Shown here one piece after another: positions 36,019 to 58,347 of a stretch of 64,000 nucleotides of DNA; position 1 is the stretch's first letter; the number at the start of each line of letters is the position of its first letter. The notes beneath the pieces are model-generated. The model saw nothing but the letters and a program-made list of their open reading frames with translations. It was not told where the DNA came from and ran no database searches. The stretch covers positions 62,001 to 126,000 of the IMG/VR virus record IMGVR_UViG_3300036766_002181; one strand, 5' to 3'. The position numbers and the translations under genes were made by a program.

Positions 36019-36909
36019 TCAAAATAGGTTCTTTACAAAGTCAAGAACTCTTTCAAAGAAGCCGGCTTTCTTTTTCTTTTTTGATGGCAATGGCTTGCCC
36101 GATTCAGAGTCAACAGTTGTCCATACCTCTGATTGCAATCCCCAATCCTCATAGGGAAAATAGGTGTAACCATTATCGGCATATCTTTTGCCCCAAGAGT
36201 TTCTAACAATAAATCCTCCCTTGTCTTTTAGATACCCAACAATGCAAGTTGCATGGTAGCCGAGAAGAGCCTGCTTGTCATTTGCCTGTTTCCACATTCT
36301 TGGTCCATAGTTGTACACGGGAATTGTAAGCAGACAGGGACCATTTTTTACAAGAGCCTTCTTTAGGGCATCTATGCTCTTAACAACAGCATAACCCTGA
36401 ACCCTATATTCTGATGCCTCTTTTTTAAGGGCCTCTGTAATTGGTAGGGTTGTAAGATAGGGATAGTCTTTTTCTGGAACAGAGCCTACCTTTGTTAGGA
36501 TTCTCATCACATCTCTTGGATACATTCCCTCACCCTTTGTAGATCTACTATTATAGATAAACTGGGGGCTCATATAGTCCAAGAAATGAACATCCCTTCT
36601 TTCCTGCCATTCCTTCATTGCGGCAGAGGACATTCCAAAGCAACAACCTTGCTTTCCCTGATCTCTTATGGGAAGAAGCTCTGGTCTATAATCAAGATTG
36701 TCTGGAAGGTCATTTAGATTAATGGCCTGATAAATTGTTTCTGCCTCGTGATCTCTTGGATCGTGTGGACTCCTTTGTACTCTATCCAAACGAACATCCA
36801 GTGCCTCTGTTACCTTTCCACCAGAAGGAGGGGAAACAACAGTAGCAGGATAGATGGTCGTGATTGTTGATGATGGTGATGATTTTTTTGATTTTGATTT
36901 TTTGGCCAT
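36019..36909 (-). CDS. Papain-like (C1) cysteine peptidase
   Basis: LPDNLDYR, IRDQGKQGCC (Q, C), SPQFIY, YHATCIVGY (H), VRNSWG (N). Confidence 0.92.
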   Translation of the reverse strand: MAKKSKSKKSSPSSTITTIYPATVVSPPSGGKVTEALDVRLDRVQRSPHDPRDHEAETIYQAINLNDLPDNLDYRPELLPIRDQGKQGCCFGMSSAAMKEWQERRDVHFLDYMSPQFIYNSRSTKGEGMYPRDVMRILTKVGSVPEKDYPYLTTLPITEALKKEASEYRVQGYAVVKSIDALKKALVKNGPCLLTIPVYNYGPRMWKQANDKQALLGYHATCIVGYLKDKGGFIVRNSWGKRYADNGYTYFPYEDWGLQSEVWTTVDSESGKPLPSKKKKKAGFFERVLDFVKNLF

Positions 36910-38081: not shown

Positions 38082-38999
38082 TTAAAAATTTAAACTCTTA
38101 TGCTTTTTCTTATGACAATCATGACAAAGAACAATACCAGAAACCTTGTTTGTCAAATGATAATCCGTAACCGCCTTAATAATTTCTTGTTTTAATTGAA
38201 AGGTTTCTATGCTGTATGGCGTGGCAACAGCATAGTGATCAGCCCAACCCAATCGCCTTGCCTCGGATATAACAATAGAAGACATAGATTCTTGATTGTG
38301 ATGGACGTTTAATTTTGGATTTTTATTGCCATTGTTATAAAAATCTTTTCCACATTCCTGACAGGCAAATCTCGCCGCTTCCAAGAAGGGGCGCTTCCAT
38401 TCCTTATAAAGCCTTTTGCTGCTGCTACACATTGTGTGCAACGGAGCAATTCCTCCCTTCCATTGAGAATGCTCTGGTCCGCTTTTTCCCTTAAAAGTTC
38501 CATCTTTCCAATACTTCTTTGCCCTTTCACTTAACCTGGGATCTGCCGATCTGTTTTCGGCCATCTTCTTAATACTTTTATTGGTTTCCTTGGTCTTGCC
38601 CTGTGCCCAATGTTGTCCGGTTTCTTTTTCAAAGAATGGGTGAAAGGTTCCATCCTCAATCATTTTCTTTCGAGTCTCAAGGGACTTTTCTCTTGCCTTC
38701 TGATTGTGACCCCAATTGTTGTTCACACGAGCAGCATGACCACGAATATATTCTCGAAATCCTTCTCGAATTCCAAGAAACTTGGTTTTTTCTCCACAGC
38801 CACAGGCACATCTTGGTTCCGAGCCATTCAATAAGATATAAAGTTCTTTCGATGGTTTTTTGTGGCCTTTTCGAAAGTGAACCGACAAGGAAAGCAAAGA
38901 GGGAAAAAGGGCTGTGCAAAGCGGGCATACATGAGGTTTAATTTCCTCCTCTTCCTCCTCCTCTTTTGATGCTACAATTGCTGCTGTTTTGTTTTCCAT
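38082..38999 (-). CDS. HNH endonuclease with zinc finger and NUMOD-like segments (free-standing homing endonuclease)
   Basis: CPLC...H...H, CACGCG, KSGPEHSQWKGG, CQECG...LNVHH...LCHDCHKKKH. Confidence 0.8.
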   Translation of the reverse strand: MENKTAAIVASKEEEEEEEIKPHVCPLCTALFPSLLSLSVHFRKGHKKPSKELYILLNGSEPRCACGCGEKTKFLGIREGFREYIRGHAARVNNNWGHNQKAREKSLETRKKMIEDGTFHPFFEKETGQHWAQGKTKETNKSIKKMAENRSADPRLSERAKKYWKDGTFKGKSGPEHSQWKGGIAPLHTMCSSSKRLYKEWKRPFLEAARFACQECGKDFYNNGNKNPKLNVHHNQESMSSIVISEARRLGWADHYAVATPYSIETFQLKQEIIKAVTDYHLTNKVSGIVLCHDCHKKKHKSLNF

Positions 39000-39183: not shown

Positions 39184-39675
39184 CTAGTATTGTGCCACGG
39201 CGTTATCAAATCTCAAAGTTAATGTGATCTCCATCAGGTCAGTTGCAGAGTCATAGGCAAGATCTCCGAACTTGGCCTCTGTAATAAAGGCACCCTTGAT
39301 ATCCCAAAGTTGGACCACTGTTCCAACTGGATCTAACATCTTGATCTGTACGTCTCTCTTGTAAAAGTCAGCATAACCGGCTCTGCCTGAAACTGATTCA
39401 AAACAAAGACGAATCCATTCCATGACCTGCTGGGCTCCTGAAGGGGCAATAGGATCATGAAGGACTACGGCAAGAGTATCAAAGGTGGTTTTTCCGGCAA
39501 CATATCTGGTTGAGTTAATCCAGGGAATAGGAATTTCCTCTGTTTTATAACCAGGGCGAGCAGCAGACTTAACAATAAAAGAATCAATGCCTTCTATGGC
39601 AAAAACGAATCTTCGCTTTGCCAGTGGTTCAAACTTGTTTGGCAACAGGGCAGAGCTATCTAGCGTGATCGTCAT
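39184..39675 (-). CDS. Tail tube protein (T4 gp19-like)
   Basis: RRFVFAIEG, ARPGYKTEEI, YVAGKTTF, QVMEW, YKRD..I.MLDPVG..V..W...GAF, LTLRFD. Confidence 0.9.
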   Translation of the reverse strand: MTITLDSSALLPNKFEPLAKRRFVFAIEGIDSFIVKSAARPGYKTEEIPIPWINSTRYVAGKTTFDTLAVVLHDPIAPSGAQQVMEWIRLCFESVSGRAGYADFYKRDVQIKMLDPVGTVVQLWDIKGAFITEAKFGDLAYDSATDLMEITLTLRFDNAVAQY

Positions 39676-39749: not shown

Positions 39750-40847
39750 ATGATATTTGTTCAAAAAGAAGCTGCTGGTGACTCTGGCATGATAGAAAAA
39801 TCTGGAATTTATCAAATTAAAAATATCATAAACAATAAGTTATATATCGGTTCTGCTAGAAACTTCAGAATAAGATTTAATGACCATATTCATAAACTTA
39901 AAAGGAATAGGCATCCAAATAAATATCTTCAAAACGTTTATAATCAAAACCCAAAAAGCTTGGCTTTTACCATAATAGAAATTGTTGAAAACTGGCAACT
40001 TAATCTTCTTATAAAGGAACAAGAATATTTGAATGTCTTCCACGACAAACAGCAGACCTGTTATAACATGTGTCCTACGGCTGGCTCGGCTTTTGGAAGA
40101 AGACACTCAGAAGAAACCAAGAAAAAGATGTCACGATCTGCTATTGGACAACCGTGTTCTATAGAAACCAGGGCCAAAATGTCTGAGATAAGCAAAAAAA
40201 GAATTAAAGATCACTTTAAATCTGGCAAAGAAAATCCAATGTTTGGAAAAACCGGGAGCAAACACCATTTTTATGGAAAGCACCAAAGCTCAGAATCAAT
40301 TCTTAAAAGAAAAGAAACCATAGCAAAAAGAGACAAACCAATTGCCTATCATGCCAGACAAATTGCCCAATATGATATGGAGGGAAATTTAATTCAGATT
40401 TTTAAATCCGTATCAGAAGCAGAAAGACAATTGAAAAACAAAGGCATCAGTAGTTGCATGTATAGAAAAGCACAAACTTCTGCTGGTTTTGTCTGGAGAG
40501 ATCCGCTAGAGGATGGTTCTTTTCCGTCAAAAATTGATGCAATTACAAAAAAGCCCACTGGCTTTTTTGGCAGACATTCACAAGAGACAATAGAGAAAAT
40601 AAGAAAAAATCATCCAAGCAAAAGATCAGTACAACAATTTGACAAACTCAATCAAGCCATATCTCTTGAAACATATTCCAGTCTAAAGGAAGCCAGCAGA
40701 AAAACTGGAATAGTCTATTCTACAATTTGTGCCTGCTGTAAAGGCAAAAGACCATCTGCCGGCGGATTCATATGGAAATATCTTTTAGAAAAAGAACCGC
40801 CAGCAGATAATCAATATCCACCATCATCATCTTCTGGCTTGTTATAA
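39750..40847 (+). mobile_element. Free-standing GIY-YIG homing endonuclease with NUMOD3/NUMOD1 repeats, opposite to the structural operon
   Basis: SGIYQIKNIINNKLYIGSA, HSEETKKKMS, GKENPMFGK, IAQYDMEGNLI..F.S..EA; likely start at 39789. Confidence 0.9.
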
Positions 40848-40951: not shown

Positions 40952-42385
40952 TTATTTTCCTATTTTAAGCAAAAGTCTCTTTCCAAGTCTTTTTGCTCTT
41001 TCATCGATATCCTCGCCTGACTTATTCCATTCTTCTGGATCAAAGTCCTTATAATAGGCCTCAACTATATTTTCTACAGACATATAGGCGTTATAGGTAA
41101 GTTCTCCTACTGGAAGAACATTAAGAAGGGCCATAATGGTCTGTTGACTGAGAAGATCCTTTTCTTTTCCATTCTTTTCTATGCCGGCCAAAGAAAAGGC
41201 ATACTTCAGGGCAAGTCTATCTTTCTTAGAAAGAGCCATCTCTGCTTCAAGATTTGAAAGAAGTCTTAAACTCTTTTTTCTGTAGCCCTCTGGATTTCCG
41301 AGAAAGTTATCTGCATTATTGTCCTCTTCTGTGTCATCGTCGTCATCATTTTTCTTCATAAAAGGAAGAACCGTACCTTCTTGTTTCATGGTATGGGCAT
41401 CTGCCTTGTAGGGCATTTTAACAGCACCAGAAAATGTTGGATTCTTTGATTTCTTTACAATTCTATCATTGGCCTCAAAGGTTACCTGGGCAATGGCATA
41501 AATCTTTTCAAGAATCTTTGTTCTGATTTTCTTTGATAATGTTTTTATCATGGTTTGAAGTTTTGGTGCAATTCTATAATCTGGGCTTCGATTCATAAGA
41601 ACCTTATGGAGAGCCCAGTTGCTATCATAAATTTTCATAAATTCTTCCCTTGAGGGAAATCCTTTTCTTCCCTTTCCATGAAAAATAAAGGCATCAAGAA
41701 TTTCTTGCAATAAAACAACCTTTATTGCCTCCATTAATCTATCTGTAAGCTCTGCATTTCCAATAACAAGGGCCCGTCTTTCTGGATCCTCTATATATTG
41801 ATCCTCGCAGAAGATTGCATCCTTAAGAACCTTGTCGGTATCAAGATCCCTGTCTTCTTCTTCCTTGTCATCATCATTGGATTCTTTTTTAAGAGGCTCT
41901 TTTTCTTGATCTAGAATTTCTGGATTGTGGTAATGATCGGGCTCATATTCCTCTTTATCATCATAGGGATTATAACGTTTTTTCTTCTTTGCGCCGCCAT
42001 ATCCCCAGCCAAAATCATCGTCGCCATCATCTAAAGAGGTTCTTTTGTTATTAAAATGACCCGGATAACCCCTTGCTTCCTCTACCTCTGTTTTTTCCTT
42101 TGCATCCAAAGAAGTTTTTTTATTATCAAAATGATGATAGCCCCTTGTTGTCCTATCCTTTAATGAAGCATGAAGTTCAATTTCTTTTTGCAGGTCAAAG
42201 TTTGCCTTTAAAAGAGTTTCGTTGGCAAGCTCTACAACCCTATTGTGCGAAACCTCTGCTGCCGTAAAGATGTAGTCGTTAAGGTTTTCTAAATACTTTA
42301 TAAGATAGTTCTTTGCAAGCTCACGACTTTCTCTGGCAGCCTCTTGCATCCAGGGCTTCTGTCTTCTTGGAGGGCGATTGTTCAT
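40952..42385 (-). CDS. Hypothetical acidic/basic protein in the structural operon
   Basis: 477-aa ORF; internal duplicated RGY(P/H)..F.NK(K/R)TSLD. Confidence 0.65.
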   Translation of the reverse strand: MNNRPPRRQKPWMQEAARESRELAKNYLIKYLENLNDYIFTAAEVSHNRVVELANETLLKANFDLQKEIELHASLKDRTTRGYHHFDNKKTSLDAKEKTEVEEARGYPGHFNNKRTSLDDGDDDFGWGYGGAKKKKRYNPYDDKEEYEPDHYHNPEILDQEKEPLKKESNDDDKEEEDRDLDTDKVLKDAIFCEDQYIEDPERRALVIGNAELTDRLMEAIKVVLLQEILDAFIFHGKGRKGFPSREEFMKIYDSNWALHKVLMNRSPDYRIAPKLQTMIKTLSKKIRTKILEKIYAIAQVTFEANDRIVKKSKNPTFSGAVKMPYKADAHTMKQEGTVLPFMKKNDDDDDTEEDNNADNFLGNPEGYRKKSLRLLSNLEAEMALSKKDRLALKYAFSLAGIEKNGKEKDLLSQQTIMALLNVLPVGELTYNAYMSVENIVEAYYKDFDPEEWNKSGEDIDERAKRLGKRLLLKIGK

Positions 42386-43620
42386 TATGGCGCCTGTAGA
42401 TCTACGTCGGGCGGGCCATAGGAATCTGCTATGTCCTGCTGCATTTCATTCCAGGCATCAACTGCCTGTTCCTTGGTTACTTCATCTACAAATTCATTAC
42501 GATTAGAGCTATCAGGGGCTCCGTCATAACAGTTGCCACAACTAATTGTATATCCCCAATAGGATCCATCATAAAGCGTTGGCAAATCTCCACAATCATG
42601 GCATGGAAGAACACCTGGAAGATCCTTGCCTTCTACTTTTCCGCCAGCAAGATCTCTAGGGCCCTCTTCCAAAGCGGGTCTTCTTCCAAATTTATTTGAA
42701 CTTTTATGTCTTCTTTTTTGTTCGTCATAGTCAAAAATAGAACCCAGATCAAAATCATCCTCGCCACAATTTGGACACTTTATGTTTCTCTCATCATCTC
42801 CTATACCAAATCGAGAACCGCAACCATTGCAGCGTATGCGCACCTTTCTAACATCTTCCTTCAGACCTTCTTCTAAAACATCAATATCTGTGCCATGACA
42901 CTTCGGACAGGTAGGATTCATTGAATTTGTACTAAACTTTCTGCCGCATTCCATACATTCAACCCTTACTTTGTGATTATCTTTTCGGGGCTTCTCGGCA
43001 TGTTCGCCTACCGTACCAACAAGAGATCTTTTTGCCACGTTGTTCCTTTTTTCCGTATGCCATGGTTCATAGGCAGAGGGTATTTCCATCCAGGTTGATC
43101 CATCATGGGCACTTGCAAATACTTGGGCAATTTTCTTTTGGATTGGAAACTCATCCAAGACTTTTCTAACCTCTTTGCTATCCTTAACATAGAGATCAGA
43201 TTCAAAATGATGCATTGTCGCATCAATTCCTAAAAGCTCCTGATAAAGACTAGAATGTCCCATTTCTTCATTAACGGGGGCCGGTCTATAGAGGGGTTCT
43301 AATTTGTTTCTTAGCCATTCATAGGGATCGCCTGATCTTGCCTTCTGGATTTCATGGGGCATTTCATCACTATAATAATCAGTTAATACAGACACTAGCT
43401 CTTGAGAAAGGTTGTCTGTTTCTCCTTTAACAAAGGCTTCGAGTTCCTGATCCTCTACAGGATCAAGATCCAATCTTACCTCTTGCTTTTTTACGTAGGG
43501 CCGGAAGCCAAGTTTTTGTGCAACTTTCCTACCAAAAGAAGATTCTTTTAATACAATAGAAGAAACAATTTCTTTCAAATGCCTCTCTGTGAGTTTTGTC
43601 TTAATTGCCATGATTGCCAT
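42385..43620 (-). CDS. Multidomain zinc-ribbon protein with C-terminal Lar-like domain; putative internal head protein
   Basis: CMECG..CPKC, CNGCG..CPNC, and PCHDCG...ISCGNC...EQAVDAWNE; KLTE, LKE and LEE linkers. Confidence 0.65.
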   Translation of the reverse strand: MAIMAIKTKLTERHLKEIVSSIVLKESSFGRKVAQKLGFRPYVKKQEVRLDLDPVEDQELEAFVKGETDNLSQELVSVLTDYYSDEMPHEIQKARSGDPYEWLRNKLEPLYRPAPVNEEMGHSSLYQELLGIDATMHHFESDLYVKDSKEVRKVLDEFPIQKKIAQVFASAHDGSTWMEIPSAYEPWHTEKRNNVAKRSLVGTVGEHAEKPRKDNHKVRVECMECGRKFSTNSMNPTCPKCHGTDIDVLEEGLKEDVRKVRIRCNGCGSRFGIGDDERNIKCPNCGEDDFDLGSIFDYDEQKRRHKSSNKFGRRPALEEGPRDLAGGKVEGKDLPGVLPCHDCGDLPTLYDGSYWGYTISCGNCYDGAPDSSNRNEFVDEVTKEQAVDAWNEMQQDIADSYGPPDVDLQAP

Positions 43621-43645
43621 GATTGCCTCTTAAAACTCCCCTTGA

Positions 43646-46624
43646 TTACACTTGGTTTGTAACCACAAAGTCAATGCTCACCGTTTCAAGCGTCTTGCTA
43701 GGCGTAATAAATATGGATCCTCTTATAATCCTGTTTTCTAAGTCTGCCTGAGTGGTCGTTGTTGTATCGATCTTAACCAAGAATCTTTCAACTCCCTTTT
43801 GATCCTGTATGGCCTTTAAAATTGGGGTTGTAAGCTGGGCAAATCTTGCAAGGGTTTCTTCACGACCCTGCTCAAAGAGCATTCTATAACCAACGGCCTT
43901 AACCTTGCGTCTAATGTCAATTAGAAGCCTTCGAACGTTAACTCTATCAAGAGAGCTTTCAGTTTGAAGAAGTGTCTTTTGTCCCCAAACCACAACTCCT
44001 TCTGAACCTGCAAAAGAAACAAGTGGATTAATGTTTGCATCCTGAAGAGTGTCCATGTTTTCTTTAGACAGTCTAACGGCTGCCGATTCTACTGTGTCTA
44101 GAGAGCCTCTGGTAAATCCAGCAGGAGCAAACCATGGATGGGCTACTGCATCATTCTTTGCAAAGGCACCAAGAACGGCGACTGAGGGTGGCACCACTCT
44201 GGTTCTTCCTGTAAAACTATCTCTAAGAACAACATCTGGGAAATAGGCAGCACCAAAAGAGCTGTTAATTCCACGGGCTGTATGTTGGTTGGAGGTGTTC
44301 TTAACGCTCAAAATCTGATTACTTGAAGAAATTGGCAAATTCTGAATATCATACTGTGGAACATCCATAATAAAGACAGAATCAAATCTGTTTTCATTAA
44401 CAAGAAGCGCCCTATCAGTGATTACTGTATGGCGAATTCCTGGAACTGCCATCATTTGAATGTCAATTTCTGTAACATCCTCAAAGATATCCAATGCCTT
44501 ATTAAAAGCAGCAACCGTTGGTCCGTCAGTAAGGCCACGATCTGCATAGGTCATTTCTTCTGTCACGGCCAAGTCTGTCATGTTGACGGCATCTCTGTCG
44601 AAAACATTTGTTCCATCAAATCCGCCATGCAAGAAGAAGGAGAACTTGGCAACATTGCGTGTTGCGGCATCAGTCAAATCATTTACAGAAAGGGCTCTAG
44701 TGTCGCTGTCCACTGTAACATTACCATCTCTTACATAAATCCACTCATCCATTTTTTGTGTATTTGGTTTATCAAAGGCATTAATTGCAATTTGTATATT
44801 TCCCAGGGAGAACTTATTATGATTAAATCTATCAGCATCAAGAATGCCATTCTCGGCAGAATCGGCAACTCCCTGGTTATTGCTTAAGACCATATTCATA
44901 AAGTCTGTATGGAAATTTGGATAATACTTGTTAAACGACAGGATGTTGGTATCCTGGGCCGTGCTTAGGTTTGGCTCTGCAACGCTGGTCTTTTCTTCAA
45001 ATTGAATGCCCCAATAAAGAGCCTTATCAACAACTCTATTTGGCGTTGAGCCTCTGGTAATTCTTTCTCTAAGAGGAACAGGCAATTGAACAATATTAAA
45101 GAAGGGATCAGAAACAGAAAGATAATCACCATCATCAAAACTGTTAAATGGAGCCGACCCAGAAGTTACAAGGTGTGGAACCCCACGGAAACCAAATGGA
45201 ACTGCGGCAGGAGAAAGTTCGCCATCAGAAACCTTGTTGGCCATTTCAACTCTCATATATCTTGAATTGTTTTCAAAATTGCCTTCGGTAATAAGCTTTT
45301 GTGAGCCAATTGCTGCATCAAAATTAAAGAAGGTTTTTGTATCTCCAACAATTCGAGCAACATATTGCGGAGAATCAGGATTTAGACTTAATCCTCTCCA
45401 TGCCTCAACTGCAACAGGAGCCTTGTCATTGTCGTTAAAATCTCTTACAAGGAGATCAAACTTGCCATAAGGCTCTGCATCTGTGCCTGGGATAATATTC
45501 TCAATTGAGAACTTAAGTCTAGAGTTTGGTTCCTTGCCATCTGAAAGGGCAGAAATCTTAAACAGATTTTCTTCCTGGCCACCAAATTTCTGTGAAACCA
45601 CATAAACAGATTCGGCAGTACGATATCTGTCTTCAAAATTTTCAAAACTTGGGATCGTGGTTGAGCCCGAGTTTCTAGTTGGCGAAGCTGACGTTAATAG
45701 GAAAACAACGTCTTCAGTTTCGAGTGCTCCCGAGACTGCGCCTACACCAAAATCCTCTAAAACAACACCTGAGCCTGTTGGCGTGGCTAGGGCTGGGTGA
45801 ATTTTATAATCAGCATATAGGAGGTGGCCTGCCTGCTCGACCTTATAAGGATCTGTATTAAGCACCTTGGTAAGATAGTTTGGTGCCGTTGGGTCAAAGG
45901 AGGCTGTAATAACATTTGGAAAGGCTGGATCAGGATTGCTGTGTCCATTTAGAAGCACAACAAATTCTTGACGCCCGTTGGCTATGTTTAGAGAGCCTGT
46001 AAGGCTCCCTGAAGCCGTTGAAGAAGTGCCTGTGGCATCTGGTGCATTGTCTGCCACTCTGCTGCTAGAGAGGGTTGCATACACTCCTGAAGCTGCAAAA
46101 ACAATACCACGAACAACCGGAACTCCTTCTATTGGTAGGCCAGCATCGGAAAAAATTGTTGAGGAACCTGTTTGCTTCATATAGCAACCAAGGACAAAGG
46201 TTCTGCCTTCATCTCCTTCGCCAGGAACGGTTACATATTGATTATCATCAAGACCACCACCAGGAGCCTGTGGAAGAACCGCACCGACAACAAAGCCGCC
46301 AAAAACAACACGGCCAGAGTTGTCACCAGCATCTTCTCTTGCCTTGCCTGAACCGGCACCAAGAACCCTAAGAAAGGTTAATGCCTGTGAATTTCTTAGC
46401 CATTCGATGGCTGCCATGGGAGCAGCAGCCTGATCATCTGTCGATGTACCAAAATCTACCACGAAGTCTGAATCCGTTGGAAGGGTTACAGGAACGAAGG
46501 CTGGTCCCTTTTGAGAAGTGCCTATAACTCCAGCCGGAATACCGGCAGGACGAATTGAAGTTGGACCAGTTCTATTGATTACCCTTGTCGTAACTCCTGC
46601 GCTCTTGTATGTTATTTGTGACAT
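43646..46624 (-). CDS. Tail sheath protein (copy 1)
   Basis: GVIGTSQKGPAFVP, LRVLG, GGFDG, AVPGI, YFPDV, PPSVA, PWFAPAG..RG, INP, WGQKTL, RVNVRRL. Confidence 0.95.
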   Translation of the reverse strand: MSQITYKSAGVTTRVINRTGPTSIRPAGIPAGVIGTSQKGPAFVPVTLPTDSDFVVDFGTSTDDQAAAPMAAIEWLRNSQALTFLRVLGAGSGKAREDAGDNSGRVVFGGFVVGAVLPQAPGGGLDDNQYVTVPGEGDEGRTFVLGCYMKQTGSSTIFSDAGLPIEGVPVVRGIVFAASGVYATLSSSRVADNAPDATGTSSTASGSLTGSLNIANGRQEFVVLLNGHSNPDPAFPNVITASFDPTAPNYLTKVLNTDPYKVEQAGHLLYADYKIHPALATPTGSGVVLEDFGVGAVSGALETEDVVFLLTSASPTRNSGSTTIPSFENFEDRYRTAESVYVVSQKFGGQEENLFKISALSDGKEPNSRLKFSIENIIPGTDAEPYGKFDLLVRDFNDNDKAPVAVEAWRGLSLNPDSPQYVARIVGDTKTFFNFDAAIGSQKLITEGNFENNSRYMRVEMANKVSDGELSPAAVPFGFRGVPHLVTSGSAPFNSFDDGDYLSVSDPFFNIVQLPVPLRERITRGSTPNRVVDKALYWGIQFEEKTSVAEPNLSTAQDTNILSFNKYYPNFHTDFMNMVLSNNQGVADSAENGILDADRFNHNKFSLGNIQIAINAFDKPNTQKMDEWIYVRDGNVTVDSDTRALSVNDLTDAATRNVAKFSFFLHGGFDGTNVFDRDAVNMTDLAVTEEMTYADRGLTDGPTVAAFNKALDIFEDVTEIDIQMMAVPGIRHTVITDRALLVNENRFDSVFIMDVPQYDIQNLPISSSNQILSVKNTSNQHTARGINSSFGAAYFPDVVLRDSFTGRTRVVPPSVAVLGAFAKNDAVAHPWFAPAGFTRGSLDTVESAAVRLSKENMDTLQDANINPLVSFAGSEGVVVWGQKTLLQTESSLDRVNVRRLLIDIRRKVKAVGYRMLFEQGREETLARFAQLTTPILKAIQDQKGVERFLVKIDTTTTTQADLENRIIRGSIFITPSKTLETVSIDFVVTNQV

Positions 46625-46676: not shown

Positions 46677-49600
46677 TTATACGAAACTGGTCCCGGACCT
46701 AGTTATGACAAAATTCATATCAATAAATTCTACTGATCTAACCGGCTTTAAAACAATTCGACAATTGATTTTATGAGCATTGATATCTGCATCAGAATTG
46801 TTCGAACTATCGCAGATAATCTTAAAAGTCTGGATTCCTTGTCTAATTTGAACGCTTGTCATTACTGAATTAATTTGATTTTTTAATTGATCCCTCAAGT
46901 CAGGAGTAATGTTTTCCCAAATTAGGCGATTTCCAATATCGATAACCTGGCGCTTAAGATCATTAAGCATTCTTACAACGTTTACGCTACCAAGAGCAGA
47001 CTCTTGCTGCTCTAAAGTATTTTGTGAAAATATGACATAACCTTCTCTTGGGAATTTAACAATTGGGTTGATATGAGCCGAGAAAAGTCTATTTCTTTCT
47101 GGCTGGGTGATTCTCGTGGTTGTTCTTTTAACAAAATCAAGAGCAGCTCTGTTAAACCCTGCGGGTGCAAACCAGGGATAGGCAACCCTATCGTTGAAGG
47201 CAAGAGCAGATACGGCTGCCACAGAAGCAGGAGCGGTTACTCTTCTTCCATTTGCCTCGTCGTCCATAACAATTTCTGGGAAATAAGAAGCCACGAATTC
47301 ATTATCAATTGCCCTGCCTTCAAGGGCATTTGCAGTTTTCTGTGGATCTGGAAAAATTCCAGTTTCTCCATCAAAAACTCTTTCGCCTGCGGCGTTATAG
47401 TTTGGAACATCCATTACATATAATGCCAGACCATAATCTCTAACCTTGTCGGCATAAAAATCGGTTACAAGTGGATCTCTCTGTCCCGGCACAGCAACCA
47501 CATTAACATTAGATGCCATTGCATCTGTAATAATCTTGGCCGATTCTCTATATGAGGCAACCGTATTATTGGCTATTCCTACTCCGTTTTGATTAAAATC
47601 AAATCCGGGAGAAATAAATGAGCCGTTAACATTTCCTAGAGTACCATCTGTTCTGTCTTCTGTTGAAGAGGCTCTATCGTCATAGGTGGCAGCATGCTTG
47701 TCAAGAATGTTTGCCCCATCAAACCCGCCTTGAAGAACCAGAGTAAATTTAGCAAATTGTGAAAATGCATTAAAGGTAGCAGCAGTTGCTCCCTTGTTAA
47801 CAAGAGTGGCAAAGGTAATCCTGTTGGTTGCATCGTCTGCATCTGTAATCATATAGTTTGTTACGTCAGGAATACCGTTTCTTATATAGGCAGCTTCCTT
47901 AATGTGCGCTTCAGCAGAAGAGGTTAAATCATTTAAACTGGTATTACCAAATGCAACCTTGGCCAGGGTAAACTTGTGATTGTGGAATCTATCCTGATTC
48001 ATAGAACTCGTTACGACAGCATCAAGCTCAGAAATTCCATTAAATTGAGTGTAGGCTGCAATAAGAGCATTTGGCTCTGTTACAGGATTTGGGTTTAGAA
48101 CATCCTTAATTCTTTCTAGTTTAACGCCCCAGAAGAATCTTCCGTCAACAATTTCAAAGTTGCCAGGAGCACCTTCTAGCTTACCAGCCTCTGTGGATAC
48201 TGCTCCACGGGTAATCTTAAATCTAAATGGAATTGGTGGTACAACGGCGGCCAACAACTCTGCATCTGCACCCGAAGTGCCAAGATTTGCATGCAATCTT
48301 TTGATATCTGCGAAATCAGCAAGAGAGCCAGATCGATCAAGCAATCTAGAGTTTGTGCTTAAAACTTCATAGCCTCTAAAGCCAAATGGAAGCGATTCGG
48401 CTGGAATCAATTTGCGCTCGACTTCATCTGAGGCAACAACCCGAACAACCTTTGATATGTTTGCATATCGGCCAGAAACGATAAGTCTACGGTCCTGCTC
48501 GTCTTCTGCATCAAAGTTATAAAAGGCTTTTCTGTCGCCAATCTTATGACAAATATAGTTTTCTGATTCAGGATCAAGATTCACATTATTAAATTGTTCA
48601 AGTATACTAATGTTCGTATCTGTATCCTCAAAGTCTCTTACAAGAACCGTAAATGTGCCAAACTTATATCTTGGATTTGAGGACTTCTTAATATCAGAGA
48701 TAGAAATCTTAAATTTCTTATTTGGAAAAGCCCCATCATCACGGGCTTCGAAATGGAAAAGATTGTGCTCGGTAATGCCAAAGGGCTGAGAAATAATTGA
48801 AGGAGTCTTTGCCTGTTTATATCTTGTATCAAATCTTCCAAAGGCATTTAAGAAAGGAAGACCCGTATCTCCTGAAAGATCGCTGGTCTGTGCAGAGCCA
48901 GAAGCAATAACAACATCTCCGCTGCTTGTTCCTACGCTTGCAACGGCGTCATCTACGGCGAAGTTTGCATAAACAACGTGCTTATATGTGCTAAATTGTT
49001 CTGGATCGGTGTTAAGTACCTTGGCAAAATAATCATCATTTGAAGGATCAAGAGAGGCGGTTACAATTCTAATTCCAGGATTTCCTTCATCGGCGGCAAA
49101 GCTTGCACCCAAGGAACAAGAAATAACAATCTTAAACTTTTTGGTTGTACTGTTTGCGGTCGCAGCATCATCTGCACCAATGGCCCAGGATTCATCATGA
49201 TCAAGAACCTGAATTCTTGTATCATTGGCCGTAAAGATAACGCCTCTTACAAGACGAGCATCTGAGCCAGAAAGACTGGTATTATGTGAAAATCCTGCCT
49301 GTCCAAAAGATTCACTCACTGAAATCTCGTGTCTTGCCACAAGAAACTGAACGGCACCATGAATTGGCTCTGAAGCCAAGGAGGCACTAACCTTAAAGCC
49401 GGCATTTACAACCGTTCCCTGTGTTCTTGTTGTTTCTATATCATCGGCGGTTGTGTTGCCACCAGCCCCCAAAACACGCACGAAAGTAAGGGCAGACCTA
49501 CTGTTGAGATGTTCGATTACAGCATAGGGAGCAGCAAATCTTGGGTTTAAATTGCCAAATCTTGTTTTAAAATCAGGAAAGGAACCAACCGTAACCGGAA

Positions 49601-49727
49601 CGAAGGCAGGGCCTCTTTCTGAGGCCCCTATGATACCCGCAGGAATACCAACTGGCTCTTGAACTTCGGCACTTAAGTCAACTTCTGTAGAAAAAAAGCC
49701 TGGAAATTTAAACACTTGACTCGTCAT
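46677..49727 (-). CDS. Tail sheath protein (copy 2)
   Basis: FPGFFSTEVD, GASERGPAFVP, VRVLG, GGFDG, AVPG, PWFAPAGFNRA, INP, VNVVRML. Confidence 0.95.
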   Translation of the reverse strand: MTSQVFKFPGFFSTEVDLSAEVQEPVGIPAGIIGASERGPAFVPVTVGSFPDFKTRFGNLNPRFAAPYAVIEHLNSRSALTFVRVLGAGGNTTADDIETTRTQGTVVNAGFKVSASLASEPIHGAVQFLVARHEISVSESFGQAGFSHNTSLSGSDARLVRGVIFTANDTRIQVLDHDESWAIGADDAATANSTTKKFKIVISCSLGASFAADEGNPGIRIVTASLDPSNDDYFAKVLNTDPEQFSTYKHVVYANFAVDDAVASVGTSSGDVVIASGSAQTSDLSGDTGLPFLNAFGRFDTRYKQAKTPSIISQPFGITEHNLFHFEARDDGAFPNKKFKISISDIKKSSNPRYKFGTFTVLVRDFEDTDTNISILEQFNNVNLDPESENYICHKIGDRKAFYNFDAEDEQDRRLIVSGRYANISKVVRVVASDEVERKLIPAESLPFGFRGYEVLSTNSRLLDRSGSLADFADIKRLHANLGTSGADAELLAAVVPPIPFRFKITRGAVSTEAGKLEGAPGNFEIVDGRFFWGVKLERIKDVLNPNPVTEPNALIAAYTQFNGISELDAVVTSSMNQDRFHNHKFTLAKVAFGNTSLNDLTSSAEAHIKEAAYIRNGIPDVTNYMITDADDATNRITFATLVNKGATAATFNAFSQFAKFTLVLQGGFDGANILDKHAATYDDRASSTEDRTDGTLGNVNGSFISPGFDFNQNGVGIANNTVASYRESAKIITDAMASNVNVVAVPGQRDPLVTDFYADKVRDYGLALYVMDVPNYNAAGERVFDGETGIFPDPQKTANALEGRAIDNEFVASYFPEIVMDDEANGRRVTAPASVAAVSALAFNDRVAYPWFAPAGFNRAALDFVKRTTTRITQPERNRLFSAHINPIVKFPREGYVIFSQNTLEQQESALGSVNVVRMLNDLKRQVIDIGNRLIWENITPDLRDQLKNQINSVMTSVQIRQGIQTFKIICDSSNNSDADINAHKINCRIVLKPVRSVEFIDMNFVITRSGTSFV

Positions 49728-51054: not shown

Positions 51055-52818
51055 TTAACCGTTATAGTGTAATTGATAAACTTCACGAGAAAGACCATAA
51101 TCAAGCAAAACAACCCTGCCGTCTGCTGTCTTGCCCCAGTGTTCTATGGTCCTTAGATCTCCATTGAGCAGTCCTGTGTCTTCCATGAGATACAAAATAC
51201 TTTGAAAGAATTTATTGTGAATTCTACGAGGATGTTTGGCGAACTCTTCTCTGCCGCCTAGCCTATCTGGAAACTTTGTTACATAAAACAAATCTGCAAC
51301 ATCCTGCTCAAAATCCAGTCCTGTTAATTTTTGGAATTCATTATAATCTGTTATTGGTCTAACAATTTCAGAAACTAACCACTGAAACTTTGGATCATAA
51401 TCGTAAATCTTGGCAACAACCGGCTTTGTTTTGGGATTGGTAAAAACATCTACTTCTGTTTCGTTTTGGGCCAGGCCTCTTGCTCCCTTTGCCCACTTTA
51501 AAACGCTTTTATTATCAACAAGATAAACTCTTCTGGCACTTCCACTGTTAAGAAAGGTTCCGTGTCTTTTAAGATAAAGTTCTTGTACCTCTTCTTTTGA
51601 GAAATGCACAGCATCTCCTGCCGACTGTAAATTTTTAAACCTTTGCAAATCAAGAAATTTCTTTTCCAAAAGAAAAGAACCATAGGCTTCTCTTAGGCCT
51701 TTTGGAAGCCGGGCAGATTCTTCTACTGTCTGTTTACCATTGTTATTTATTCTCCGTCTTAGCTCTTCGTTGCCACCTTCAACGGCAATGCCATAATCCA
51801 ATACAACCAATCTTCCATCTGCCGTTTTACCCCAATGTCCGATATAGGTAAGTTCCGAAGCGTATATACCAACATCTGTAATGAAACTAACAATCTTTTT
51901 TAAAAAAGAATTGTCTTTATATCTGTTGAGCACGCGGCCGAGGCTCTCTTGTTGCCAACAGACGGCATTAAATTCTTCAAAAGGAATTCCTGTTAAAATT
52001 TCAAAGTCCCGGTCGCTTGTTAATTCTTTTACCAACTCAGAAACAAGCCATCTAGGACGTTCAAAGTTTGTATCATAATCAAAAATCCTCGTTACAAGAT
52101 CTTTTGTTTTTGGATTTGTAAACACGTCTAGCTCGGCCTGGTTTTGTCTTAATCCAAACTTGTTATAGGCAAACTTTAAAACCTTGTTGTTTGAAAGCAT
52201 ATAGGTTTCCCTTGAAGAGCCCTGACCAAGATATGCCTCTTTTGGAACTCTATGTGCCAAATAGTATTGTTGATCCTCCCAATTTATTATTTTCTTAAAC
52301 TCATTAAAATCAAAGAATTTTTTCCCTTCATTTATAACAACGGGAAAATAAACCTCTCTTAGTGAGAGCACCTCTTGCTGTGTCACCGTCGCAATTGGCT
52401 CATTAAAACCTTTTGTGTTATAATGATATGGCGCAAGCTGTTGCCCTGTAAGAACATGGGCAAAGTCATTATTTTTGTCTCTATTTGGTTCGTCTCCTGA
52501 ATAAAGATTTGGTGTAGACATAAGCTTACTATAGGCAGCATAGACAGCCTTGTGAAGCTTCTCGCTGGTCAGGGATTGGGTTGTATAGGTTGCCATGCTC
52601 CCAAGCTCTTCCATGACGCCCAGACGAAGCTCGTTCATAACAACCTTTCTAAGATCCAAGCCAAGTCTTTTTGCTATATTCTCTACAAACTCTTCTGTTA
52701 TCGTTTTTGGATTAAGGGGGCGGATTCCTGGATTTGCCAGTCCCATGCCAAGATCATCTCGATTGGTAGCCTGCATGTCTTGCTCTAAATAGATCAATAG
52801 TTGGCCCAAATTATTCAT
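51055..52818 (-). CDS. Tandem double atypical protein-kinase-like protein
   Basis: Two copies of L.(Q/S)GS.R..Y..VLK.A..QN..E..VFTNPKTK..WLVSE..HWGKTADGR.V.LDYG; start probably MNNLGQ at 52818. Confidence 0.8.
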   Translation of the reverse strand: MNNLGQLLIYLEQDMQATNRDDLGMGLANPGIRPLNPKTITEEFVENIAKRLGLDLRKVVMNELRLGVMEELGSMATYTTQSLTSEKLHKAVYAAYSKLMSTPNLYSGDEPNRDKNNDFAHVLTGQQLAPYHYNTKGFNEPIATVTQQEVLSLREVYFPVVINEGKKFFDFNEFKKIINWEDQQYYLAHRVPKEAYLGQGSSRETYMLSNNKVLKFAYNKFGLRQNQAELDVFTNPKTKDLVTRIFDYDTNFERPRWLVSELVKELTSDRDFEILTGIPFEEFNAVCWQQESLGRVLNRYKDNSFLKKIVSFITDVGIYASELTYIGHWGKTADGRLVVLDYGIAVEGGNEELRRRINNNGKQTVEESARLPKGLREAYGSFLLEKKFLDLQRFKNLQSAGDAVHFSKEEVQELYLKRHGTFLNSGSARRVYLVDNKSVLKWAKGARGLAQNETEVDVFTNPKTKPVVAKIYDYDPKFQWLVSEIVRPITDYNEFQKLTGLDFEQDVADLFYVTKFPDRLGGREEFAKHPRRIHNKFFQSILYLMEDTGLLNGDLRTIEHWGKTADGRVVLLDYGLSREVYQLHYNG

Positions 52819-58119: not shown

Positions 58120-58347
58120 TTATTTTCCTTTAGGAGTGGCCTTGGTGACGGCCTTTTTCTTTGAGTCTTGAATAACCTCATTAAGAGATTCTCGAATCAT
58201 TTTTCTAAGCTCGTCTATTGAAAGCTTCTTTCCTTCTTTTTGAACAGGCAATTGTTTCTTTGCCTTTTGAACAGATTCTTTGACCATCTTCTTTACAAGG
58301 GCCACGAATTGTTGCTCCGTTAGCTTAATTTCTTTGTTTTTTGTCAT
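58120..58347 (-). CDS. Small basic late protein (scaffold/internal-protein-like)
   Basis: IKLTE, MVKES, MIRESLNE motifs; late-promoter motif at 58366-58373. Confidence 0.6.
   Translation of the reverse strand: MTKNKEIKLTEQQFVALVKKMVKESVQKAKKQLPVQKEGKKLSIDELRKMIRESLNEVIQDSKKKAVTKATPKGK

What the first reader, a model, noticed from the sequence alone, without database searches (positions are those of the whole stretch)
42385..43620. Zinc-ribbon array ending in a Lar-like (restriction alleviation) domain, directly downstream of the sheath genes
There are two CxxC-CPxC ribbons and a terminal PCHDCG...ISCGNC...EQAVDAWNE unit. The terminal unit matches the Lar-family pattern (PCxxCG...CxxC...A..AWN). 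Established: Rac prophage Lar modulates EcoKI restriction/modification. Its placement in a structural operon with LxE linkers suggests an injected anti-restriction cargo, analogous in role to P1 DarA/DarB or the T4 internal proteins.
Basis: partly seen in the sequence, partly recalled or inferred. Interest (0 to 1): 0.6.

Follow-up and report, generated by a model that had tools for sequence, protein, structure and literature searches.

The report
Mosaic zinc-ribbon, Lar-like phage head cargo candidate
A late gene of an uncultured huge T4-like phage encodes a patchwork protein (a short head-targeting-like leader, two unnamed small domains, two zinc ribbons and a Lar-like zinc domain) that may be loaded into the capsid and injected with the DNA, but neither packaging nor anti-restriction activity is shown.

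Summary
Window 42385-43620 (minus strand) is one 411-aa ORF, 25 nt downstream of the second of two tail-sheath genes. Its 12 cysteines form exactly three Cys4 units: two paralogous ribbons and a C-terminal unit. The C-terminal unit matches Pfam Lar_restr_allev at 28.3 bits (cut-off 28.6). 23 of 28 members of its "CYDGAPDS" subfamily also match.

The ORF has no full-length relative. It is a mosaic of five modules that occur alone elsewhere.

Three findings bear on the "injected cargo" idea:
- At least nine otherwise unrelated ORFs of this 245-kb phage share a 14-residue N-terminal leader (MKITKxQLKxIIKE) ending in [LI]xE, the T4 gp21 cleavage motif. Five of them flank the gp21-like protease and the gp23-like capsid gene.
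- This ORF and its positional orthologs carry a divergent version of that leader.
- Its ribbons are homologous to ribbons of proteins in the gp67/gp68 prohead-core slot of other T4-like phages.

Head targeting is therefore plausible (about 0.45) but unproven. Anti-restriction rests only on distant membership of a poorly characterised family, whose founder RalR/Lar is also reported as a DNase toxin.

The parts
42385..43620 (-). The whole ORF, 411 aa (P0001). It is a mosaic protein and is translationally coupled to the next ORF (TAATG overlap).
   Evidence: identical in an independent Logan contig
43540..43620 (-). Residues 1-27: divergent leader MAIMAIKTKLTERHLKEIVSSIVLKE|S, with LKE ending at residues 17 and 26. 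A 9-bp tandem duplication (GCAATCATG twice) gives MAI-MAI. Counted from the second ATG, the first LKE ends at residue 14, as in canonical leaders.
   Evidence: Alignment A5. BLASTP without the low-complexity filter aligns P0040 residues 2-132 to P0001 residues 9-117. The leave-one-out HMM does not detect it.
43270..43482 (-). Residues 47-117: module A (motif DEMPxxxQKARxGDPxEW), a small helical domain. This is the part conserved in the positional orthologs.
   Evidence: AF2 with alignment A3, pLDDT about 90; only weak LuxR/GerE-like HTH matches, Z 3-3.9
43036..43269 (-). Residues 118-195: module B (motif HESDLYV...PFAYxPWW), a small alpha/beta domain. Elsewhere it is a stand-alone protein of about 72 aa.
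   Evidence: pLDDT 89-98; no significant fold match
42871..42978 (-). Residues 215-250: zinc ribbon 1 (C222, C225, C238, C241). Up to 69% identical to stand-alone proteins of 44-70 aa.
42745..42846 (-). Residues 259-292: zinc ribbon 2 (C264, C267, C282, C285), a paralog of ribbon 1.
42619..42744 (-). Residues 293-334: charged linker, predicted disordered, containing ALEE|G (317-320).
42421..42618 (-). Residues 335-400: Lar-like Cys4 ribbon plus C-terminal helix (C340, C343, C361, C364; AVDAWNE), of the 'CYDGAPDS' subfamily.
43646..46624 (-). Tail sheath paralog 2 (992 aa), immediately upstream.
46677..49727 (-). Tail sheath paralog 1 (1016 aa).
40952..42385 (-). Downstream 477-aa highly charged ORF. 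It has no family match and is not conserved in the relatives compared.
39184..39675 (-). Tail tube protein (gp19-like), which closes the sheath-to-tube slot.
39750..40847 (+). Free-standing GIY-YIG homing endonuclease inside the same slot.
58120..58347 (-). 75-aa basic ORF with weaker, partly internal leader-like repeats (VKKMVKES; KKLSIDELRKMIRES).

Best explanation
P0001 is a late-expressed accessory protein of an uncultured huge T4-superfamily phage. The record is 244.7 kb from sediment and about 57% complete by CheckV. The protein was built by stringing together small modules that elsewhere are separate small phage proteins. In order they are a short N-terminal leader, helical module A, alpha/beta module B, two paralogous Cys4 zinc ribbons, and a Lar-family Cys4 ribbon with a helix.

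The proposed mechanism has four steps.
1. The gene is co-transcribed with the sheath genes (inferred from the 25-nt gap and the overlap with the next ORF).
2. The amphipathic leader docks the protein to the prohead core, as the 10-20-residue capsid targeting sequences of T4 internal proteins do (inferred).
3. The gp21-like protease removes the leader after L-K-E. It may also cut at the two L-E-E|G linkers, releasing ribbon and Lar-like fragments the size of their stand-alone relatives (inferred).
4. The mature protein or fragments stay with the packaged DNA, enter the host with it, and act before any phage gene is expressed. The Lar-like and zinc-ribbon modules would bind DNA or a host nuclease or modification complex to blunt restriction (inferred by family name only).

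Shown here: the module anatomy, the leader family and its clustering, the presence of the protease, the synteny, and the homology of the ribbons to proteins of the prohead-core slot. Not shown: packaging, cleavage, injection, or any activity.
For: MOSAIC. An exhaustive HMMER search gave 382 hits at E<=1e-3, none full length. Each hit covers only one block, or one block plus a short overlap into its neighbour: residues 47-136, 118-195, 215-250 (or 215-292), or 335-400. The word search found only the protein itself.

LEADER FAMILY.
- Nine ORFs of the genome share MK[IL]TKxxLKx[IL][IL]xE. L8 and E14 are invariant, and [LI]xE ends at residue 14 in eight of the nine.
- Profile E-values are 1e-8 to 1e-11 per genome.
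- Beyond residue 26 these ORFs show no similarity to each other.
- Across all 329 called ORFs, [LI]xE ending at residue 14 is over-represented: 12 against about 4 at other positions.
- Five of the nine leader ORFs flank the Peptidase_S77 gp21-like protease (37.1 + 29 bits) and the Gp23 capsid gene (209.7 bits); the gene order is.
- The profile also finds N-terminal leaders in a relative's record (3 hits) and in the 484-kb phage LR756508 (4 hits, all within the region spanning its protease, capsid and sheath genes and about 12 kb beyond the sheath). It finds none in T4.

P0001'S LINK TO THE LEADER.
- In three relatives the gene directly after sheath 2 carries module A behind a more canonical leader. 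These are L003 (161 aa), P0003 (220 aa; leader + ribbon + A) and P0040 (403 aa).
- MAFFT aligns P0001's KLTERHLKEIVSSIVLKE to L004's KLTPEHLKELIEEAIAKE, and places an [LV]x(K)E at matching positions of the alignment in P0001 and L003, with L006's one position away.

RIBBONS.
- Residues 204-292 are 33-44% identical to ribbons of P0021, P0041, P0080 and P0123.
- Three of those genes, where the context was read, lie in the T4 gp67/gp68 position. Examples: Portal_T4, 222 aa, 79 aa, P0021, 119 aa, Peptidase_S77, T4_CASP; P0123, 393 aa, Peptidase_S77, T4_CASP; Portal_T4 (363.8 bits), 232 aa, 85 aa, P0080.
- Their N-terminal helix matches T4 gp67 residues 2-48 by hhalign (probability 54%, E 1.3e-4).
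- P0006 combines three such ribbons with an internal canonical leader string.

LAR-LIKE DOMAIN.

T4 FRAMEWORK FROM THE LITERATURE. gp21 cuts after L/I-x-E. The 10-20-residue N-terminal capsid targeting sequence is sufficient to load foreign proteins. Internal proteins are diverse apart from that sequence, and IPI* blocks GmrSD (PMC9026906; PMC3012670; PMC5694885). The N-termini of T4 gp24, gp23, Alt and gp22 read from NC_000866 end in [LI]xE at residues 10, 18, 6 and 9.
Against: - P0001's own N-terminus is NOT detected by a profile of the nine canonical leaders (E>10). Its link is transitive, through orthologs that themselves score only E 0.08-0.5.
- P0001 carries a 4-7-residue N-terminal extension and lacks the canonical E14.
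- The gene lies in the tail block, about 30 kb from the prohead protease gene and about 20 kb from the nearest head-module leader ORFs.
- No leader protein has a recognisable function, and no virion proteome exists for any relative; the closest cultured phage has only 31% sheath identity.
- In T4, proteins of the gp67/gp68 slot are mostly degraded and expelled, not injected. Ribbon homology therefore argues for 'head core', not specifically for 'cargo'.
- The leader string also occurs internally in P0006, so it may be a general helix.
- Lar membership is sub-threshold, and similarity to RalR is not significant.
- Stand-alone members of the Lar-like subfamily sit in cassettes of small genes, one of them next to an HTH-type regulator gene and typical of early genes. 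This shows the domain normally works from within the cell.
Confidence: 0.45

Rival explanations
1. P0001 is a late cytoplasmic accessory protein that is never packaged. The modules act inside the infected cell, for example by modulating host or phage DNA modification (Lar is described as also enhancing modification), protecting progeny DNA, or regulating late functions. The N-terminal helix would then be an ordinary helix.
For: P0001's leader fails the leave-one-out profile test. Stand-alone relatives of the Lar-like module, module B and ribbon 1 are small proteins. The Lar-like ones whose context was read lie in cassettes of small genes, where they must act from within the cell. In Mel-JY01 and T4 the sheath gene is followed directly by the tube gene, so this slot is an accessory insertion site that also holds a homing endonuclease.
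Against: The positional orthologs carry more canonical leaders. The ribbon family recurs in prohead-core-slot proteins. The tight coupling to the sheath genes implies high late expression, which is an odd time to counter restriction from inside the cell.
Confidence: 0.25
2. P0001 is a prohead core or scaffold-type component rather than cargo. The leader and the ribbons serve head assembly, as T4 gp67/gp68 do. The protein is cleaved and mostly expelled at maturation, and the Lar-like unit is simply a third structural zinc ribbon.
For: Ribbon homologs occupy the gp67/gp68 slot and have a gp67-like helix. Multi-ribbon arrays are typical of those proteins. P0001 is the only bearer of this ribbon pair in the genome record. 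In T4, core proteins are cut into fragments at L/I-x-E.
Against: The gene is variable and accessory across relatives (161-411 aa; only the window's copy has module B, ribbon 2 and the Lar-like unit). It lies outside the head module. The C-terminal unit belongs to a family of independent small proteins found in small-gene cassettes, which is not expected for a purely structural piece.
Confidence: 0.15
3. P0001 is a tail-associated protein, such as an assembly factor or minor tail component. This would explain its conserved place between the sheath and tube genes.
For: A gene carrying module A directly follows sheath 2 in at least four phages of this clade.
Against: The more distant relative Mel-JY01 and T4 lack any gene there. 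No tail family matches. Module A also occurs alone (77-81 aa) and inside 700-1420-aa proteins in unrelated contexts, for example next to terminase genes.
Confidence: 0.07
4. P0001 is a DNA-targeting selfish or toxic protein. The Lar/RalR-like unit could act as a DNase, or the ribbons could be DNA-binding parts of a degenerate homing-endonuclease-like element, matching the homing endonucleases that fill this region.
For: RalR (= Lar) is reported to be a non-specific DNase. PHROG 681 and 559 'endonuclease' families match weakly over residues 161-298. GIY-YIG and HNH genes are neighbours.
Against: The PHROG matches cover only the ribbons. No nuclease catalytic domain was found. Similarity to RalR is not significant. 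The gene is co-oriented with and coupled to the structural genes.
Confidence: 0.05

Closest known systems
Rac prophage Lar / RalR (Pfam PF14354, Lar_restr_allev)
   Same: The C-terminal unit has the family's layout: PCxxCG, about 15 residues, CxxC, then a helix with A..WN. The profile match covers model positions 3-55 of 58, and 23 of 28 subfamily members hit the family.
   Different: The score is 0.3 bits below the cut-off. BLASTP to RalR is not significant. The subfamily carries a YDGAPDSxxRxE insert after the second CxxC. Here the domain is the tail of a 411-aa late protein, not a 64-aa early protein. The family's biochemical function is itself unsettled: restriction alleviation according to the title of King & Murray 1995 as cited in PMC4041452, and DNase toxin in the text of PMC4041452.
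T4 internal proteins IPI/IPII/IPIII and Alt, with capsid targeting sequences
   Same: A short N-terminal peptide shared by otherwise unrelated proteins and ending in [LI]xE. A gp21-type protease is present in the genome. Several such genes lie beside the head genes. One T4 member, IPI*, is an injected anti-restriction protein.
   Different: The leader sequences are not homologous: the clade's leader profile finds nothing in T4. The leader here is 14 residues (17-26 in P0001). P0001 is multi-domain, whereas the T4 IPs are described as small internal proteins. Packaging is untested.
T4 gp67/gp68 prohead-core slot, and the zinc-ribbon proteins that occupy it in metagenomic T4-like phages (P0021, P0080, P0123)
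   Same: P0001's two ribbons are homologous to theirs at 33-44% identity. Ribbon arrays are a shared theme.
   Different: P0001 lacks their gp67-like N-terminal helix, sits between the sheath and tube genes rather than between the portal and protease genes, and adds modules A, B and the Lar-like unit.
Polyvalent proteins of phages and conjugative elements (Iyer et al. 2017, PMC5512222)
   Same: Several unrelated domains in one polypeptide, each also found solo. The gene is encoded among virion genes. Such proteins are proposed to be delivered with the DNA.
   Different: None of the hallmark polyvalent-protein domains was detected. All modules here are small, non-enzymatic-looking and unnamed.
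Phage P1 DarA/DarB/Hdf (head-packaged defence against restriction)
   Same: Only the proposed role is shared: antirestriction proteins carried in the head and processed proteolytically.
   Different: No Dar-family match appeared in the Pfam or PHROG scans. The sizes and architecture are different.
HypA nickel metallochaperone (PF01155)
   Same: The Cys4 zinc ribbon (model positions 66-100 of 112) scores 43.6 bits over two copies.
   Different: Only the zinc module matches; the rest of the HypA model, including its N-terminal part, is absent. The same partial hit is seen in the stand-alone ribbon proteins scanned. P0001 is not a HypA.

Membership tests
Lar_restr_allev (PF14354) | Profile score at or above Pfam's gathering cut-off (28.6 bits) | tested here: inconclusive
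   28.3 bits, E 2.1e-6, in the full protein; 24.8-25.3 bits for the excised domain. A six-frame family search of the genome reported no match.
Lar_restr_allev (PF14354) | Cys4 ribbon PCxxCG...CxxC followed by a helix with the A..WN motif | tested here: met
   C340/C343/C361/C364 and AVDAWNE. Invariant columns in the subfamily alignment A1 are C, C, P, C, C, A, D and W.
Lar_restr_allev (PF14354) | Closest relatives are themselves family members | tested here: met
   23 of 28 sequences of alignment A1 hit PF14354, best E 7.8e-9. P0008 scores 30.6 bits, above the cut-off.
Lar_restr_allev (PF14354) | Small stand-alone protein (RalR is 64 aa) encoded among early or recombination genes | tested here: not met
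   Here it is the C-terminal domain of a 411-aa ORF in the sheath operon. Stand-alone relatives do fit this feature.
Lar_restr_allev (PF14354) | Alleviates type I restriction and enhances modification | not testable with these tools
   This needs plating assays. The founder protein is also reported to be a DNase toxin.
T4-type capsid-targeting-sequence (CTS) cargo / internal proteins | Short N-terminal peptide shared by otherwise unrelated proteins of the same phage | tested here: inconclusive
   Clearly met for nine ORFs of the genome. P0001 itself is missed by the leave-one-out profile and is linked only through orthologs and alignment A5.
T4-type capsid-targeting-sequence (CTS) cargo / internal proteins | The peptide ends in the protease motif L/I-x-E | tested here: met
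   LKE ends at residues 17 and 26 (14 and 23 counted from the second Met). [LI]xE ends at residue 14 in 8 of the 9 canonical leaders.
T4-type capsid-targeting-sequence (CTS) cargo / internal proteins | A gp21-family prohead protease is encoded by the phage | tested here: met
   PF03420, 37.1 + 29 bits, at genome 136829-138556, outside the window. The capsid protein is T4 Gp23-like.
T4-type capsid-targeting-sequence (CTS) cargo / internal proteins | Present in virions in processed form and ejected into the host | not testable with these tools
   The phage is uncultured and no proteome is available. Only one DNA run holds the sequence.
Polyvalent proteins (Iyer et al. 2017) | Two or more disparate domains that also occur solo, encoded among virion genes | tested here: met
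   Five modules each have stand-alone relatives. The gene lies in a structural operon.
Polyvalent proteins (Iyer et al. 2017) | Contains hallmark polyvalent-protein domains (ArdC-N, MuF, MPTase, LPDs and others) | tested here: not met
   No such Pfam hit at E<=1.
HypA (PF01155) | Full-length HypA domain, not only its zinc module | tested here: not met
   Only model positions 66-100 of 112 match, twice.

The most novel reading that the evidence does not exclude
This clade of huge T4-like phages has its own 14-residue capsid-targeting tag (MKITKxQLKxIIKE|), which it uses to load a dozen or so unrelated proteins into the head. New cargo would be made by fusing small stand-alone 'early' counter-defence genes (Lar-like, zinc-ribbon, HESDLYV-type) behind a tagged carrier. 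The prohead protease would then cut at LxE linkers and release them as separate pre-made effectors injected with the DNA. P0001 would be such a multi-warhead cargo. It would also be the first Lar-family domain known to be delivered as protein rather than expressed after entry.
Probability: 0.25. Interest if true: 0.75.

Novelty: new variant of a known kind. Interest (0 to 1): 0.55.

Why it matters
If the leader is a true capsid-targeting sequence, it gives a simple sequence rule for listing the injected proteins of an uncultured huge-phage clade. At least nine such proteins are in this record, and all are of unknown function. It would also show how small early anti-defence genes can be converted into pre-made injected effectors by fusion. 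In addition, it would place a Lar-family domain, whose biochemistry is still disputed, in a context where it must act at the moment of DNA entry, which sharpens what to test. A second result stands whatever the mechanism: three widespread unnamed small-protein families (module A, module B 'HESDLYV', and the VECxECGKKF ribbon) are defined here, with confident fold models for the first two. Zinc-ribbon arrays are also shown to be a recurrent feature of proteins in the gp67/gp68 prohead-core slot of T4-like phages.

Tried and rejected
- Word-index homology searches with the whole protein and with the C-terminal 92 aa found only the protein itself. The exhaustive search was therefore used.
- tblastn against 50,697 phage records gave one hit, a stand-alone ORF of about 73 aa in Virus Rctr197k.
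- A phmmer or profile search of PDB sequences gave nothing meaningful.
- The single-sequence AlphaFold model was poor (pLDDT 38.6) and was not used for fold searches.
- A global MAFFT alignment of all 130 short hits mixed the modules (A2) and was discarded.
- The good model of modules A+B (pLDDT 87.3) found no convincing fold relative. In Foldseek PDB the best E was 0.07. In VIA-align the best Z was 4.2, with recurrent but weak LuxR/GerE HTH matches for module A and ferredoxin-like or HAD-cap matches for module B. In BFVD there was one uncharacterised protein at E 2.7e-4.
- The Atlas searches were uninformative.
- Nine of the ten leader ORFs scanned have no usable Pfam or PHROG annotation. The one sub-threshold hit, PF25734 'RelB_like_antitoxin', covers only the leader helix of one ORF.
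- The T4 late-promoter string TATAAATA is not enriched (6 against 4.4 expected). Sigma-70-like promoter and terminator scans are at background.
- BLASTP of P0080 against T4 gp67 found nothing, and Pfam GP67 did not hit the ribbon proteins. Only hhalign gave a weak match.
- The 477-aa downstream ORF has no relatives among the neighbours compared.
- No RNA run holds the sequence, so expression could not be checked.
- No alternative genetic code was used.


Full report
WHAT IS THERE. The finding is one ORF on the minus strand, window 42385-43620, 411 aa (P0001). The window is bases 62001-126000 of a 244,715-bp IMG/VR virus record that CheckV rates about 57% complete, so this is a huge phage. An independent Logan contig from the only public run that holds the sequence (a sediment metagenome, probably the source sample) covers window 41800-44200 without a single difference. 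The two ORFs upstream are tail-sheath paralogs of about 1000 aa (phrog_23, E 4.6e-51 and 3.2e-44). After P0001 come a 477-aa charged ORF with no relatives, a GIY-YIG homing endonuclease on the other strand, the gp19-like tail tube and an HNH endonuclease. P0001 starts 25 nt after the sheath stop codon and overlaps the next ORF by one base. No promoter or terminator signal rises above background, so co-transcription with the sheath genes is the simplest reading.

The 12 cysteines are exactly six CxxC pairs that make three Cys4 units. Ribbons 1 and 2 are paralogs and give the Pfam 'HypA' hit, which covers only HypA's zinc module. The C-terminal unit matches Lar_restr_allev over 53 of 58 model positions at 28.3 bits, against a cut-off of 28.6. 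I aligned it with 27 stand-alone relatives of 63-125 aa from the exhaustive search (alignment A1). These form a tight subfamily with the pattern PCxRCG, about 12 residues, CxxCYDGAPDSxTRxE, about 8 residues, AIxxWNE. 23 of the 28 sequences hit PF14354 on their own, with a best E of 7.8e-9. Direct BLASTP to E. coli RalR/Lar is not significant. The domain is therefore a divergent branch of the Lar family, not a close homolog of Lar.

THE PROTEIN IS A MOSAIC. The word-index search found only the protein itself. The exhaustive HMMER search found 382 proteins, none full length. Hits fall into separate blocks:
- Residues 47-136, module A (motif DEMPxxxQKARxGDPxEW).
- Residues 118-195, module B (motif HESDLYV...PFAYxPWW), mostly stand-alone proteins of about 72 aa.
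- Residues 215-250, ribbon 1, up to 69% identical to proteins of 44-70 aa.
- Residues 215-292, both ribbons.
- Residues 335-400, the Lar-like unit.
No hit that was scanned or looked up carries a family or source name, and the two modules of P0001 itself match no Pfam or PHROG family. With a two-module alignment (A3), AlphaFold gives a confident model (pLDDT 87.3): a small helical domain followed by a small alpha/beta domain. Fold searches found nothing convincing. Module A's repeated weak matches to LuxR/GerE-type HTH domains (Z 3-3.9) are only a lead.

SYNTENY. In relatives with 57-66% identical sheath proteins, the gene directly after sheath 2 is a shorter protein that shares only the N-terminal part of P0001. 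These are L003 (161 aa: leader + A), the contig of P0003 (220 aa: leader + ribbon + A) and L006 (P0040, 403 aa: leader + A + unrelated tail). L004 has instead a run of small ORFs there. In the more distant Microcystis phage Mel-JY01 and in T4, the tube gene follows the sheath gene directly. The slot is therefore a clade-specific accessory site. Only the window's copy has acquired module B, the second ribbon and the Lar-like unit.

THE LEADER. The small ORFs of L004 and the orthologs begin with the same kind of peptide, so I scanned the whole genome.
- Nine ORFs start with MK[IL]TKxxLKx[IL][IL]xE. L8 and E14 are invariant, and [LI]xE ends at residue 14 in eight of the nine.
- The profile scores them at E 1e-8 to 1e-11.
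- Beyond residue 26 they are unrelated to each other.
- They range from 89 to 384 aa and from basic to very acidic.
- None has a usable family match.
- Five of them flank the head-maturation genes just outside the window. Three follow the gp21-like protease (PF03420). Two lie about 2-4 kb downstream of the Gp23-like capsid gene, beyond one intervening 684-aa ORF.
- The same profile finds N-terminal matches in the record of L004 (3) and in the 484-kb uncultured phage LR756508 (4). Those four lie within the region spanning that phage's protease, capsid and sheath genes and about 12 kb beyond the sheath. The profile finds none in T4.

This is what the T4 literature describes for capsid targeting sequences. 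They are 10-20-residue N-terminal propeptides, shared by otherwise diverse internal proteins. They are sufficient to load foreign proteins into the head, and gp21 removes them after L/I-x-E (PMC9026906, PMC3012670, PMC5694885). T4's own gp24, gp23, Alt and gp22 N-termini, read from NC_000866, show the motif.

HOW WELL DOES P0001 FIT THE LEADER? Only partly, and this is the main caveat. A profile of the nine canonical leaders does not detect its N-terminus, and it detects the orthologs' N-termini only weakly (E 0.08-0.5, always at Met1). MAFFT aligns P0001 from its second Met with a 4-residue insertion. KLTERHLKEIVSSIVLKE then matches L004's KLTPEHLKELIEEAIAKE at 10 of 18 positions. In P0001, L003 and L006 the canonical E14 is replaced, and an [LV]x(K)E follows about one helical turn later. 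A 9-bp tandem duplication at the start codon explains the MAI-MAI beginning.

THE RIBBONS POINT TO THE HEAD CORE. The double-ribbon block of P0001 is 33-44% identical to ribbons in P0021, P0041, P0080 and P0123. These proteins share an N-terminal helix that hhalign matches to T4 gp67 residues 2-48 (probability 54%, E 1.3e-4; BLASTP and Pfam GP67 are negative). The three of those genes whose context was read lie where T4 has gp67/gp68:
- Portal_T4, 222 aa, 79 aa, P0021, 119 aa, Peptidase_S77, T4_CASP.
- P0123, 393 aa, Peptidase_S77, T4_CASP.
- Portal_T4 (363.8 bits), 232 aa, 85 aa, P0080.
P0006 combines three such ribbons with an internal copy of the canonical leader string. P0001 is the only ORF of its genome record with this ribbon pair.

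INTERPRETATION. Three lines of evidence make 'a protein that enters the prohead' the best single explanation, at about 0.45. They are the leader family, the T4-type protease and the head-core affinity of the ribbons. Whether P0001 stays in the head as injected cargo or is a core component that is degraded is open. The variable, accreted architecture favours cargo, as does the fact that the C-terminal unit belongs to a family of independent small proteins found in small-gene cassettes. The two L-E-E|G strings sit exactly at module borders and could be protease sites that release separate fragments. However, the [LI]xE count is not significant (7 against 4.2 expected), and the string after ribbon 1 is part of that ribbon family's own tail. 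The anti-restriction function is the weakest link. It rests on a sub-threshold family match, and the founding member is documented both as a restriction alleviator (the title of King & Murray 1995, as cited in PMC4041452) and as a non-specific DNase toxin (PMC4041452).

COMPARISON AND NOVELTY. P0001 works like a T4 internal protein or a small polyvalent protein (PMC5512222). It is not a member of any T4 IP family and has no hallmark polyvalent domains. It is a divergent member of the Lar family at the domain level only. It is not a HypA. I rate it a new variant of known kinds. The more interesting by-product is the clade-specific leader, which gives a testable list of candidate head-internal proteins in an uncultured huge phage.

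LIMITS. Everything about packaging, cleavage and activity is inference. The relatives are metagenomic fragments.

Noticed in passing
genome G000:C1 126639-127007, 127055-128209, 135616-136125, 136147-136473, 136470-136832 (L015), 166714-167454 (L016), 183350-183658 (L017), 224039-224308 and 224314-224775 (L018); all outside the window: Nine otherwise unrelated ORFs share the 14-residue N-terminal leader MK[IL]TKxxLKx[IL][IL]xE. Five of them flank the gp21-like protease and the gp23-like capsid gene. They are candidates for capsid-targeted proteins. Weaker variants are at window 58120-58347 and at genome 1263-1835 and 183699-184433.
   Followed up: yes
window 36019-36909 (-): A 296-aa papain-family cysteine protease (Peptidase_C1, 65.6 bits against a cut-off of 20.7) sits inside the late structural region. 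It is not the prohead protease, and its role is unknown.
   Followed up: partly
genome 136829-138556 (-) and 130427-132340 (-), outside the window (L010-L013, L015): The gp21-like protease ORF is 575 aa, against 212 aa in T4. Its Pfam match, like that of the 637-aa Gp23-like capsid protein, is split in two by an insertion. LR756508 has the same long protease frame (576 aa), so the insertion is a clade feature and not a recent mobile element.
   Followed up: partly
window 39750-40847 (+), 38082-38999 (-), 53560-54645 (-); genome 128218-130272 (-): Free-standing GIY-YIG and HNH homing endonucleases are scattered through the tail and head operons, as in T4 (segD and segE lie next to genes 23 and 24). 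The 684-aa ORF next to the capsid gene begins with a GIY-YIG-like motif.
   Followed up: partly
genome 139629-146714 (-), outside the window: A 2361-aa ORF lies upstream of the prohead protease block, separated from the protease gene by one 347-aa ORF. It was not scanned, so it is unknown whether it is a portal with insertions or a giant internal protein.
   Followed up: no
window 51055-52878 (-): A 607-aa ORF matches phrog_4301 (E 3.2e-29, unknown function) and matches faintly the Pfam family 'Kinase-PolyVal' (E 0.0023, below the cut-off).
   Followed up: no
window 43603-43620 (-): A 9-bp tandem duplication (GCAATCATG twice) at the start of P0001 creates two in-frame ATGs (MAI-MAI). AAGAGG lies 5 nt before the first ATG. 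The database copy (P0002) is annotated from the second.
   Followed up: partly
L024/L025 8001-9506 and 6589-8094; L023 2126-2647; the contig of P0123: In metagenomic T4-like phages, the gp67/gp68 slot between the portal and prohead protease genes is occupied by proteins with a gp67-like N-terminal helix followed by arrays of Cys4 zinc ribbons (173-501 aa). A search of the held paper library found no description of zinc-ribbon prohead-core proteins.
   Followed up: partly
L026 41-601 (P0006): A 186-aa protein with three zinc ribbons carries the canonical leader string (MKEDQLKKIIREEIE) internally, between ribbons. The leader helix is therefore not strictly N-terminal everywhere.
   Followed up: no
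L008 2262-6524 (P0115): Module A also occurs in the middle of a 1420-aa protein with no Pfam match. That protein is encoded two genes upstream of the terminase genes of a phage contig of about 42 kb. It may be a large virion-delivered protein.
   Followed up: no
L015 10054-10125 (-): The leader of one ORF gives a sub-threshold hit to Pfam PF25734 'RelB_like_antitoxin' (24.1 bits; model positions 4-28 of 43). Only the helix matches, so this is probably incidental.
   Followed up: yes
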